A stretch of 63,942 bases of DNA, the filler included, from Octopus bimaculoides (lineage: Eukaryota), in NCBI RefSeq assembly GCF_001194135.2. It is 9 parts of 8 records of this genome, joined end to end, with 100 filler letters (N's around TTAATTAATTAA, not from the genome) between each part and the next. Parts side by side here need not be neighbours in the genome. Positions count along the whole stretch, not along the records: positions 39,919 to 44,450 come from NC_068996.1; 8 more parts are not named here. One strand, given 5' to 3'. This document shows positions 42,788 to 43,303 of this stretch, piece by piece. Position 1 is the first letter of the stretch; every line of letters begins with the position of its first letter. The notes below the pieces were generated by a model. It saw only the letters and a list, made by a program, of their open reading frames with translations, did not search any database and had not been told where the DNA came from. The position numbers and the translations under genes were made by a program.

Positions 42788-42873
42788 GCTTACGGCAATA
42801 TCACGTTGAATACACCGGTTCTCATCCGATCACCGAAGTTAAGCAACGTCGAGCCTAGTTAGTACTTAGATGG
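42788..42873 (+). pseudogene. 5S rRNA 5' fragment (about nt 1-86), truncated within box C
   Basis: GCTTACGGCAATATCACGTTGAATACACCGGTTCTCATCCGATCACCGAAGTTAAGCAACGTCGAGCCTAGTTAGTACTTAGATGG closely follows metazoan 5S; 3' third absent. Confidence 0.92.
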
Positions 42874-43030
42874 CGTGGCTGTGTGGATAGAAGCTTGCTT
42901 CCCAACCACATGGTTCCGAGTTCGGTCCCACTGCATAGCACGGTGAACAAGTGTCTTCTACAATAGCTTCAGGCCAACCAAAGCCTTGTGAGTAGATTTG
43001 GTAGACGGAAACTGAAAGAAGCCTGTCTTA

Positions 43031-43084
<54 letters not shown>

Positions 43085-43303
43085 TCTCTGTGTGTCCACT
43101 CCCTACCCCCACGCACCACCGTTTGGCAACCAGTGTTGGTGTGCATAAGTCCCCGTACCTTAGCCTTTCGTAGAAGAGACAGATAGAATAAGTACAAGTC
43201 TCAAACAAAATAAGTCCTGGGGTCGATTTATTCGATTTAAAACCATTTCAAGGCAGTGCCCTAGCATGGCCGCATTCAAACGACTGAAACAAGTAAAAGA
43301 TAA
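42874..43303 (+). mobile_element. SINE family A fused directly to the 5S fragment
   Basis: Starts CGTGGCTGTGTGG, lacking the GGCGCA of other copies; B-box-like GAGTTCGGTCCC; internal (TG)n; CAAGTAAAAGATAAAA tail. Confidence 0.9.

What the first reader, a model, noticed from the sequence alone, without database searches (positions are those of the whole stretch)
42788..43303. 5S rRNA fragment fused seamlessly to a tRNA-derived SINE
Seen: about 86 nt of 5S rRNA, starting at its natural 5' end and stopping in box C (GTACTTAGATGG), runs straight into a family-A SINE that lacks only its first few bases. The junction has GG microhomology (GATGG / CAGG-CGTGGCTGTGTGG). The rest of the 5S does not reappear after the SINE tail and I see no TSD, so this is not a simple SINE-into-5S insertion. 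Known: 5S-headed SINE3 and 5S+tRNA hybrid SINEs exist in some animals, and RT template switching creates such chimeras. Inference: either a one-off template switch or a member of an unrecognised 5S/tRNA hybrid subfamily with two types of internal Pol III promoter.
Basis: partly seen in the sequence, partly recalled or inferred. Interest (0 to 1): 0.75.

Follow-up and report, generated by a model that had tools for sequence, protein, structure and literature searches.

The report
5S rRNA fragment fused to SINE
The first 86 bases of a 5S ribosomal RNA are joined directly to a nearly complete copy of the common octopod SINE; this is most likely a decayed by-product of retrotransposition of a known kind, and I could not test whether it is a single accident or one copy of a family.

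Summary
Bases 42788-42873 are 5S rRNA positions 1 to 86/87 (Rfam 72.2 bits, E 4e-16, cut at the 3' end). From 42874 the sequence is a copy of the SINE that also lies intact on the minus strand at 40857-41265, lacking only its first 5-8 bases. No 5S remainder follows the SINE and no target-site duplication is visible.

The promoter claim is only half right. 5S box A is present. The intermediate element carries a change. Only 7 of 18 box C bases are there. The SINE head has A- and B-box-like motifs but does not reach the Rfam tRNA model.

The most likely origin is a LINE reverse transcriptase that jumped from SINE RNA onto 5S rRNA. This route is already proposed for AmnSINE1-type heads and for HaSE3 in moths.

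The one related locus is from Argonauta hians and shares only the SINE's central domain. An Octopus vulgaris repeat annotation lists four "5S" SINE consensus sequences covering 9.8 Mb, without describing them.

Interest is modest: a new instance of a known kind.

The parts
42729..42787 (.). 5' flank: (TA)/(TG)n-like simple sequence that abuts 5S position 1
   Evidence: (family D1). No 5S-array spacer can be recognised. The intact minus-strand SINE copy also sits in TA-rich simple sequence.
42788..42873 (+). 5S rRNA fragment, positions 1 to 86/87, from the natural 5' end
   Evidence: Rfam RF00001: 72.2 bits, E 4.4e-16, model 1-87/120, cut at the 3' end. No non-standard pair is marked in the internal helices, columns 14-66 of the alignment.
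42837..42851 (+). 5S box A equivalent (positions 50-64), AGTTAAGCAACGTCG
   Evidence: 11 of 15 bases match a Xenopus-type 5S recalled from memory. Lies in the well-aligned part of the Rfam match.
42854..42859 (+). 5S intermediate element equivalent (positions 67-72), CCTAGT instead of CCTGGT
   Evidence: A where the Rfam consensus has g
42867..42873 (+). First 7 of 18 bases of 5S box C (positions 80-86), TAGATGG; the rest is replaced by the SINE head
   Evidence: over positions 80-97 only 7 of 18 bases match
42870..42875 (+). Junction zone ATGG|CG: one G is shared for certain; ATG is shared if a one-base slip is allowed
   Evidence: compared with the SINE starts GGCGCATGCGTGG (43325-) and GGCGCAGGAGTGG (minus-strand copy)
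42874..43308 (+). Nearly full-length SINE ('family A') lacking its first 5-8 bases
   Evidence: alignments (I1, I8, I9, I10); identities
42876..42886 (+). tRNA-type box A-like site, TGGCTGTGTGG (1 mismatch to TRGCNNAGTGG)
42919..42929 (+). tRNA-type box B-like site, AGTTCGGTCCC (2 mismatches to GGTTCGANNCC)
   Evidence: no Rfam tRNA hit at E<=10
42937..43027 (+). Central SINE domain, also conserved in Argonauta hians
   Evidence: blastn gives 86% for this copy and 91.5% for the minus-strand copy against L001 10040-10133; alignment A1
43029..43095 (+). (TG)n microsatellite inside the SINE
   Evidence: the minus-strand copy has a (TA/TG) stretch at the same place
43096..43308 (+). SINE 3' part and tail (...GACTGAAACAAGTAAAAGATAAAACAG)
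   Evidence: 78.5% identical to the minus-strand copy
43309..43324 (.). 16-base spacer; the only 3' flank left before the next SINE
   Evidence: no TSD found
43325..43362 (+). Head-only fragment of another copy of the same SINE, with the natural 5' end
   Evidence: (D3 at 90%, I12 at 87%)
43383..43387 (+). First run of four or more T downstream (TTTTT). There is none between 42700 and 43382, so a Pol III transcript starting at 5S +1 would read through the whole unit.
40857..41265 (-). Intact reference copy of the same SINE, flanked by an 8-bp direct repeat TATGTATA (40849-40856 and 41266-41273)

Best explanation
This is a single (or very low-copy) chimeric retrocopy. While a LINE reverse transcriptase was copying a family-A SINE RNA at a nick in TA/TG-rich DNA, it left that template 5-8 bases before its 5' end. 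It continued on a 5S rRNA molecule from about position 86 and ran off at the 5S 5' end. The product, 5S(1-86) plus SINE, was integrated and has decayed since.

Shown: the two parts, their order and shared orientation, the exact 5S start, the near-complete SINE, and the absence of a 5S remainder.

Inferred: the RNA-level jump, the single event, and that this copy is not itself a source gene. The last rests on the truncated box C, the altered intermediate element and the degraded box B.
For: The 5S part starts exactly at position 1 and abuts non-5S simple sequence, as expected when a reverse transcriptase runs off the end of an RNA. The SINE follows in the same orientation, is complete at its 3' end and lacks only 5-8 bases at its 5' end. 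The junction has 1-3 bases of overlap. No 5S bases 87-120 follow the SINE.

The SINE head has the same variant bases (GCGTGG, GAAGC, TTCCC) as the ordinary, normally headed fragment 17 bases downstream. Over the 31 bases that can be compared, it looks like an ordinary SINE transcript rather than a special lineage (D3).

The 5S promoter is incomplete: box C 7 of 18 bases, one change in the intermediate element. This argues against efficient Pol III transcription from 5S +1 and so against propagation.

A template switch from SINE RNA to 5S rRNA is the published explanation for composite 5S/tRNA SINE heads (Nishihara 2006, as cited in PMC4824008 and PMC4758252) and for HaSE3 (PMC3272025).
Against: No target-site duplication frames the unit. 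However, only 16 bases of 3' flank remain before the next SINE.

In the classical human chimeric retrogenes the 5' partner RNA is usually full length (my recollection of Buzdin et al. 2003, not checked here). Here it stops at position 86.

Meeting a unique event in a 4.5-kb piece of a genome of roughly 2.8 Gb (as implied by the coverage figures) is unlikely beforehand, unless the scan covered a great deal of sequence.

An O. vulgaris annotation lists four 'SINE 5S' consensus sequences covering 9.8 Mb. These could be such chimeras.

Copy number could not be measured at all.
Confidence: 0.45

Rival explanations
1. This is one decayed copy of a propagated 5S-headed subfamily of the octopod SINE. 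A founder chimera, formed by the same template switch, kept enough promoter (5S box A and intermediate element, perhaps working with the SINE's own A/B boxes through TFIIIC) to be transcribed from 5S +1 and was then amplified by the partner LINE.
For: The architecture matches known cases. HaSE3 is a 5S head on the body and tail of the tRNA-derived HaSE1. AmnSINE1-type heads are 5S plus partial tRNA.

There is no run of four or more T between 5S +1 and 43383, so a Pol III transcript could carry the whole unit.

The O. vulgaris annotation lists 4 'SINE 5S' consensus sequences covering 9,831,953 bp.

An abundant family is far easier to meet in a random 4.5-kb piece than a unique event (inference).
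Against: Box C, the main TFIIIA contact (established knowledge, not tested here), is cut after 7 of 18 bases, and the intermediate element is changed. Described 5S SINEs keep boxes A, IE and C.

Transcription driven by the SINE's own A/B boxes would start just upstream of box A and leave the 5S part out (inference).

The '5S' class in the O. vulgaris paper is not described. Its 7 'recent insertions' average about 6 kb (42,242 bp), which looks more like 5S rDNA arrays than SINEs.

No second copy of the junction was seen anywhere, though nothing searchable held octopus DNA.
Confidence: 0.3
2. The fusion arose at the DNA level. In one version, a 5'-truncated SINE inserted into a dispersed 5S pseudogene and the 5S 3' part and the TSD were lost later. 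In the other, a microhomology-mediated deletion joined a 5S copy to a SINE that lay just downstream.
For: 5'-truncated insertions with short microhomology at the 5' junction are common for LINE-driven insertions (established knowledge).

The 3' side is visibly rearranged. Sixteen bases after the tail comes a head-only SINE fragment (43325-43362), then unrelated sequence leading into a LINE-like ORF.

AGATAG after the tail weakly resembles 5S AGATGG. GGTAAGCGTTTT at 43398-43409 weakly resembles a 5S 3' end with its terminator (sequence; the comparison is from memory).
Against: Rfam finds no 5S remainder at E<=10 in 43290-43470. No TSD is present. The weak resemblances were found after the fact and are at chance level. 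This route needs two events where the template switch needs one.
Confidence: 0.2
3. The junction is an assembly artefact: a false join of 5S rDNA reads and SINE reads in a draft assembly.
For: The piece comes from a draft assembly with an N gap at 41291-41481. Both partners are multi-copy.
Against: The overlap at the junction is only 1-3 bases, too short to mislead a k-mer or overlap assembler (inference). The 5S part carries several changes from the consensus, as expected of an old dispersed copy rather than reads from the active array.
Confidence: 0.05

Closest known systems
HaSE3 of Helicoverpa armigera (5S rRNA-derived SINE sharing body and tail with the tRNA-derived HaSE1; PMC3272025)
   Same: A 5S-derived 5' part joined to the body and tail of a resident tRNA-type SINE. 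The authors explain it by a template switch from SINE RNA to 5S rRNA during cDNA synthesis.
   Different: HaSE3 is a multi-copy family found in several species. Its 5S similarity is highest over boxes A, IE and C, and it shares only the body and 3' tail of HaSE1, not its head. Here box C is cut after 7 bases, the tRNA-like head is kept almost whole, and only one copy is known.
Composite 5S + partial tRNA heads of vertebrate DeuSINEs (AmnSINE1, SINE3-1, OS-SINE1; Nishihara et al. 2006)
   Same: 5S sequence fused to the 5' side of a tRNA-derived SINE head, attributed to template switching.
   Different: [quoted passage not shown] They carry the Deu domain and are ancient, abundant families. Here the tRNA-like head is nearly intact, which would be an earlier stage if the element propagated at all.
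Chimeric retrogenes made by LINE reverse-transcriptase template switching (Buzdin et al. 2003; cited in PMC4758252 and PMC4824008)
   Same: The 5' part is a small Pol III RNA starting at its natural 5' end. The 3' part is a 5'-truncated retroelement in the same orientation. Each is a single-copy product.
   Different: As I recall, the 5' partner is usually full length and the chimera is framed by one TSD pair. Here 5S stops at position 86 and no TSD is seen.
'SINE 5S' class in the Octopus vulgaris repeat annotation (Bonar et al. 2026, PMC13282606)
   Same: The host group is probably the same (octopods). It is a 5S-related repeat class filed under SINEs: 4 consensus sequences, 9.8 Mb.
   Different: The sequences are not shown or described. 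The 7 'recent insertions' average 6 kb, so some or all may be 5S rDNA arrays. Whether any has this junction is unknown.

Membership tests
SINE in the SINEBase sense (PMC3531059) | Short (<1 kb), interspersed, non-tandem repeat | tested here: inconclusive
   The unit 42788-43308 is 521 bases and not tandem, but only this one copy of the 5S+SINE unit is known.
SINE in the SINEBase sense (PMC3531059) | [quoted passage not shown] | not testable with these tools
No collection held this SINE.
SINE in the SINEBase sense (PMC3531059) | At least 60% identity with tRNA, 5S rRNA or 7SL RNA over at least 60 bases | tested here: met
   86 bases match the Rfam 5S model at 72.2 bits, E 4.4e-16.
5S-derived SINE (SINE3 / HaSE3 type) | Head derived from 5S rRNA, beginning at or near 5S position 1 | tested here: met
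   Model position 1 aligns to 42788.
5S-derived SINE (SINE3 / HaSE3 type) | Complete type-1 internal promoter: box A, intermediate element and box C | tested here: not met
   Box A is present. The intermediate element has 5 of 6 bases. Only positions 80-86 of box C (80-97) are present; 7 of 18 bases match (element coordinates from memory of Xenopus 5S).
5S-derived SINE (SINE3 / HaSE3 type) | Copies framed by target-site duplications | tested here: not met
   No repeat of 5 bases or more between the flanks. The 3' flank is only 16 bases long.
Template-switch chimeric retrogene | 5' part is a small RNA with its natural 5' end; 3' part is a retroelement in the same orientation, complete at its 3' end and truncated at its 5' end | tested here: met
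Template-switch chimeric retrogene | One TSD pair around the whole chimera | tested here: not met
Template-switch chimeric retrogene | Single copy, or independent junctions at other loci | not testable with these tools
   No genome or reads of the source organism could be reached.
5S gene or pseudogene interrupted by a SINE | 5S positions 87-120 resume after the SINE tail, with a duplicated target | tested here: not met
   No 5S hit at E<=10 in 43290-43470; no TSD.
tRNA-derived SINE (SINE2), for the 3' partner | Head recognisably similar to a tRNA, with A and B boxes | tested here: inconclusive
   Box A-like site with 1 mismatch and box B-like site with 2 mismatches. No Rfam tRNA hit at E<=10 for either copy and no ARAGORN call.

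The most novel reading that the evidence does not exclude
The element is a member of a propagated 5S-headed subfamily of the main octopod SINE. This would be the first 5S-headed SINE described in a mollusc. It would be caught at the stage where the tRNA-like head is still almost whole, and would be driven by a hybrid internal promoter: 5S box A and intermediate element without box C, together with tRNA-type A/B boxes.
Probability: 0.3. Interest if true: 0.55.

Novelty: new member of a known kind. Interest (0 to 1): 0.3.

Why it matters
Composite 5S/tRNA SINE heads are known in vertebrates and moths, but only as finished families. How a new head is captured, and when the promoter hands over, is inferred after the fact.

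A copy in which the first 86 bases of 5S, from the RNA's own first base, sit on an almost intact tRNA-type SINE shows what the first product of such a capture looks like. If it turned out to be a family, octopods would give a young system in which the handover from a type-2 to a type-1 Pol III promoter could be tested directly. It would also show that a 5S head lacking most of box C can still be propagated.

If it is a single event, it is an ordinary by-product of very active LINE/SINE retrotransposition and has no further consequence.

Tried and rejected
**Reads**

**Junction pattern**
- AGTACTTRGATGGCGTGGCYGTGTGG gave 0 hits in metagenome, prokaryote-genome and viral contigs.
- The control with the SINE core TTGGTAGACGGAAACTGAAAGAAGCC also gave 0 hits in all three.
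- The negatives therefore carry no information.

**Protein-database route to other copies**
- A junction-spanning translation found no candidates.
- The gag-like ORF found nothing at E<=1e-3.
- A 113-aa antisense SINE frame found one Argonauta hians protein. Its 20-kb locus L001 shares only the central SINE domain and has no 5S.

**Other look-ups**
- Exact look-up of six window ORFs near the junction: none on record.
- Text search for four sequence strings in papers: nothing.

**Ideas tested and dropped**
- A 5S 3' end surviving at 43398-43409 (GGTAAGCGTTTT): no Rfam support at E<=10.
- A stable fold of the chimeric 5' region: z-score -0.35.
- The full-length 5S alignment over the SINE head: it scores lower than the truncated one.

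Full report
**What is there**

In the first scan, the Rfam 5S_rRNA model was the only family to reach its gathering score in the piece. Scanned alone, 42770-42873 gives a match at 42788-42873. It covers model positions 1-87 of 120, scores 72.2 bits with E 4.4e-16, and is flagged as cut at the 3' end. The full-length alignment that runs on over the next 22 bases scores only 63.9 bits. So 5S homology ends at 42873. The fragment begins at 5S position 1, directly after TA/TG-rich simple sequence at 42729-42787.

From 42874 to about 43308 the sequence aligns end to end with the reverse complement of 40857-41265. Identity is 85% in the head, 88% in the central part, 71% in an internal (TG)n stretch and 78.5% in the 3' part. 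That minus-strand copy is flanked by the 8-bp direct repeat TATGTATA, so its 5' end, GGCGCAGGAGTGG, is the natural start of the element. A head-only fragment at 43325-43362 starts the same way, GGCGCATGCGTGG. The fused copy begins at ...ATGG|CGTGGCTG and therefore lacks only 5-8 bases. The overlap at the join is one certain G, or ATG if a one-base slip is allowed.

**What is not there**

- No 5S positions 87-120 follow the SINE. Rfam at E<=10 on 43290-43470 finds no 5S.
- I had noticed a resemblance of GGTAAGCGTTTT (43398-43409) to a 5S 3' end. It has no support and I dropped it.
- No direct repeat of 5 bases or more links the 40 bases upstream of 42788 with 43285-43340. Only 16 bases of 3' flank remain before the next SINE fragment, so a missing TSD is weak evidence.
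- The chimeric 5' region has no unusual fold (z-score -0.35).

**Promoter content**

I used the standard Xenopus numbering for the 5S internal control region: box A 50-64, intermediate element 67-72, box C 80-97. This is from memory.

| Element | Window position | State |
|---|---|---|
| 5S box A | 42837-42851 | present |
| 5S intermediate element | 42854-42859 | CCTAGT, one change |
| 5S box C | 42867-42873 | first 7 of 18 bases only, one of them changed |
| SINE box A-like site | 42876-42886 | 1 mismatch |
| SINE box B-like site | 42919-42929 | 2 mismatches |

Neither this SINE head nor that of the intact copy reaches the Rfam tRNA model at E<=10, and ARAGORN calls nothing. So 'two types of internal promoter' overstates the case: this is one incomplete type-1 promoter next to a degraded type-2 promoter. 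There is no run of four or more T from 42700 to 43382. The first is TTTTT at 43383-43387. A Pol III transcript that started at 5S +1 could therefore carry the whole unit.

**Host**

No tool named the organism. The only protein relative of a SINE-derived frame is a hypothetical protein of Argonauta hians. Its locus L001 shares the roughly 94-base central domain at 91.5% with the minus-strand copy, but has a different head and tail. This places the window among octopods. My recollection is that this is the abundant Octopus SINE with an internal microsatellite; that is memory, not a result.

**Family or one-off**

This was the decisive question and I could not answer it.

- The junction pattern found nothing in the three DNA collections. 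A 26-base core of the SINE found nothing either, so those collections gave no sign of holding such DNA and the negatives are empty.
- Protein-database tricks and exact ORF look-ups found no further octopod locus apart from L001.

**Literature**

- Composite 5S plus partial tRNA heads are known in vertebrate DeuSINEs and are explained by a template switch from SINE RNA to 5S rRNA.
- HaSE3 of Helicoverpa is a 5S head on the body and tail of a tRNA-derived SINE, with the same explanation.
- A 2024 review table lists 5S-promoter SINEs only in fish, insects and mammals.
- My searches found no described mollusc case.
- A 2026 repeat annotation of O. vulgaris lists a 'SINE 5S' class with 4 consensus sequences covering 9,831,953 bp. 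It does not describe them. The single 'recently active' 5S family has 7 insertions totalling 42,242 bp, about 6 kb each. That looks more like 5S rDNA arrays than SINEs.

**Weighing the explanations**

The exact 5S start, the shared orientation, the near-complete SINE and the missing 5S remainder fit an RNA-level chimera made in one step by a LINE reverse transcriptase. Whether that product stayed unique or founded a subfamily is open.

- Against a family: most of box C is lost, whereas described 5S SINEs keep it. The SINE's own boxes would also be expected to start transcription downstream of the 5S part.
- For a family: precedent, the absence of an internal terminator, the undescribed '5S' class in O. 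vulgaris, and the simple point that an abundant element is easier to meet by chance than a unique one.

My estimates are 0.45 for a one-off, 0.30 for a family, 0.20 for a DNA-level origin (insertion into a 5S pseudogene plus loss, or a deletion joining neighbours) and 0.05 for an assembly artefact.

**Verdict**

This is a real and neatly built 5S/SINE chimera of a kind already known in other animals. It is a new instance rather than a new kind.

Noticed in passing
window 43780-44450 (frame of 43601), running off the right edge: Open reading frame ending in a CCHC zinc knuckle (CYECGKVGHIRVDCPQ). It looks like a LINE ORF1 or gag. It found no homologue at E<=1e-3 among 5.8 billion proteins. Its upstream untranslated part may begin near 43363, which would explain why the SINE copy at 43325-43362 is cut after 38 bases.
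   Followed up: partly
window 42937-43027 and 41104-41197; L001 10040-10133: The central roughly 94 bases of the SINE are 91.5% identical to an element in Argonauta hians that has a different head and a different 3' part. This appears to be a central domain shared between different octopod SINEs.
   Followed up: partly
window 40459-40520 (+), body to about 40760: A second, different SINE-like element with a tRNA-like head (Rfam tRNA 22.6 bits, E 0.25, below the gathering score).
   Followed up: no
window 40203-40301 (+) and 41934-42032 (-): A third repeat family: a 99-base inverted pair, 78% complementary (I7).
   Followed up: no
window 40849-40856 / 41266-41273, and 42729-42787: Both SINE copies whose 5' flank can be read sit in TA/TG simple sequence. 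The intact copy has the TSD TATGTATA. The SINE also carries its own internal (TG)n or (TA/TG)n stretch. This may reflect a target preference for TA-rich microsatellites, or seeding of microsatellites by the SINE.
   Followed up: no
window 42788-42873: Several departures of the 5S fragment from the Rfam consensus are A where the consensus has G (CUCAUCC, CCUAGUU, CUUAGAUGG). This is a possible G-to-A bias on the plus strand. There are too few sites, and no host 5S reference, to judge.
   Followed up: no
window 41291-41481: An assembly gap (run of N) inside a (TA)n tract, directly beside the 5' end of the intact minus-strand SINE copy.
   Followed up: no
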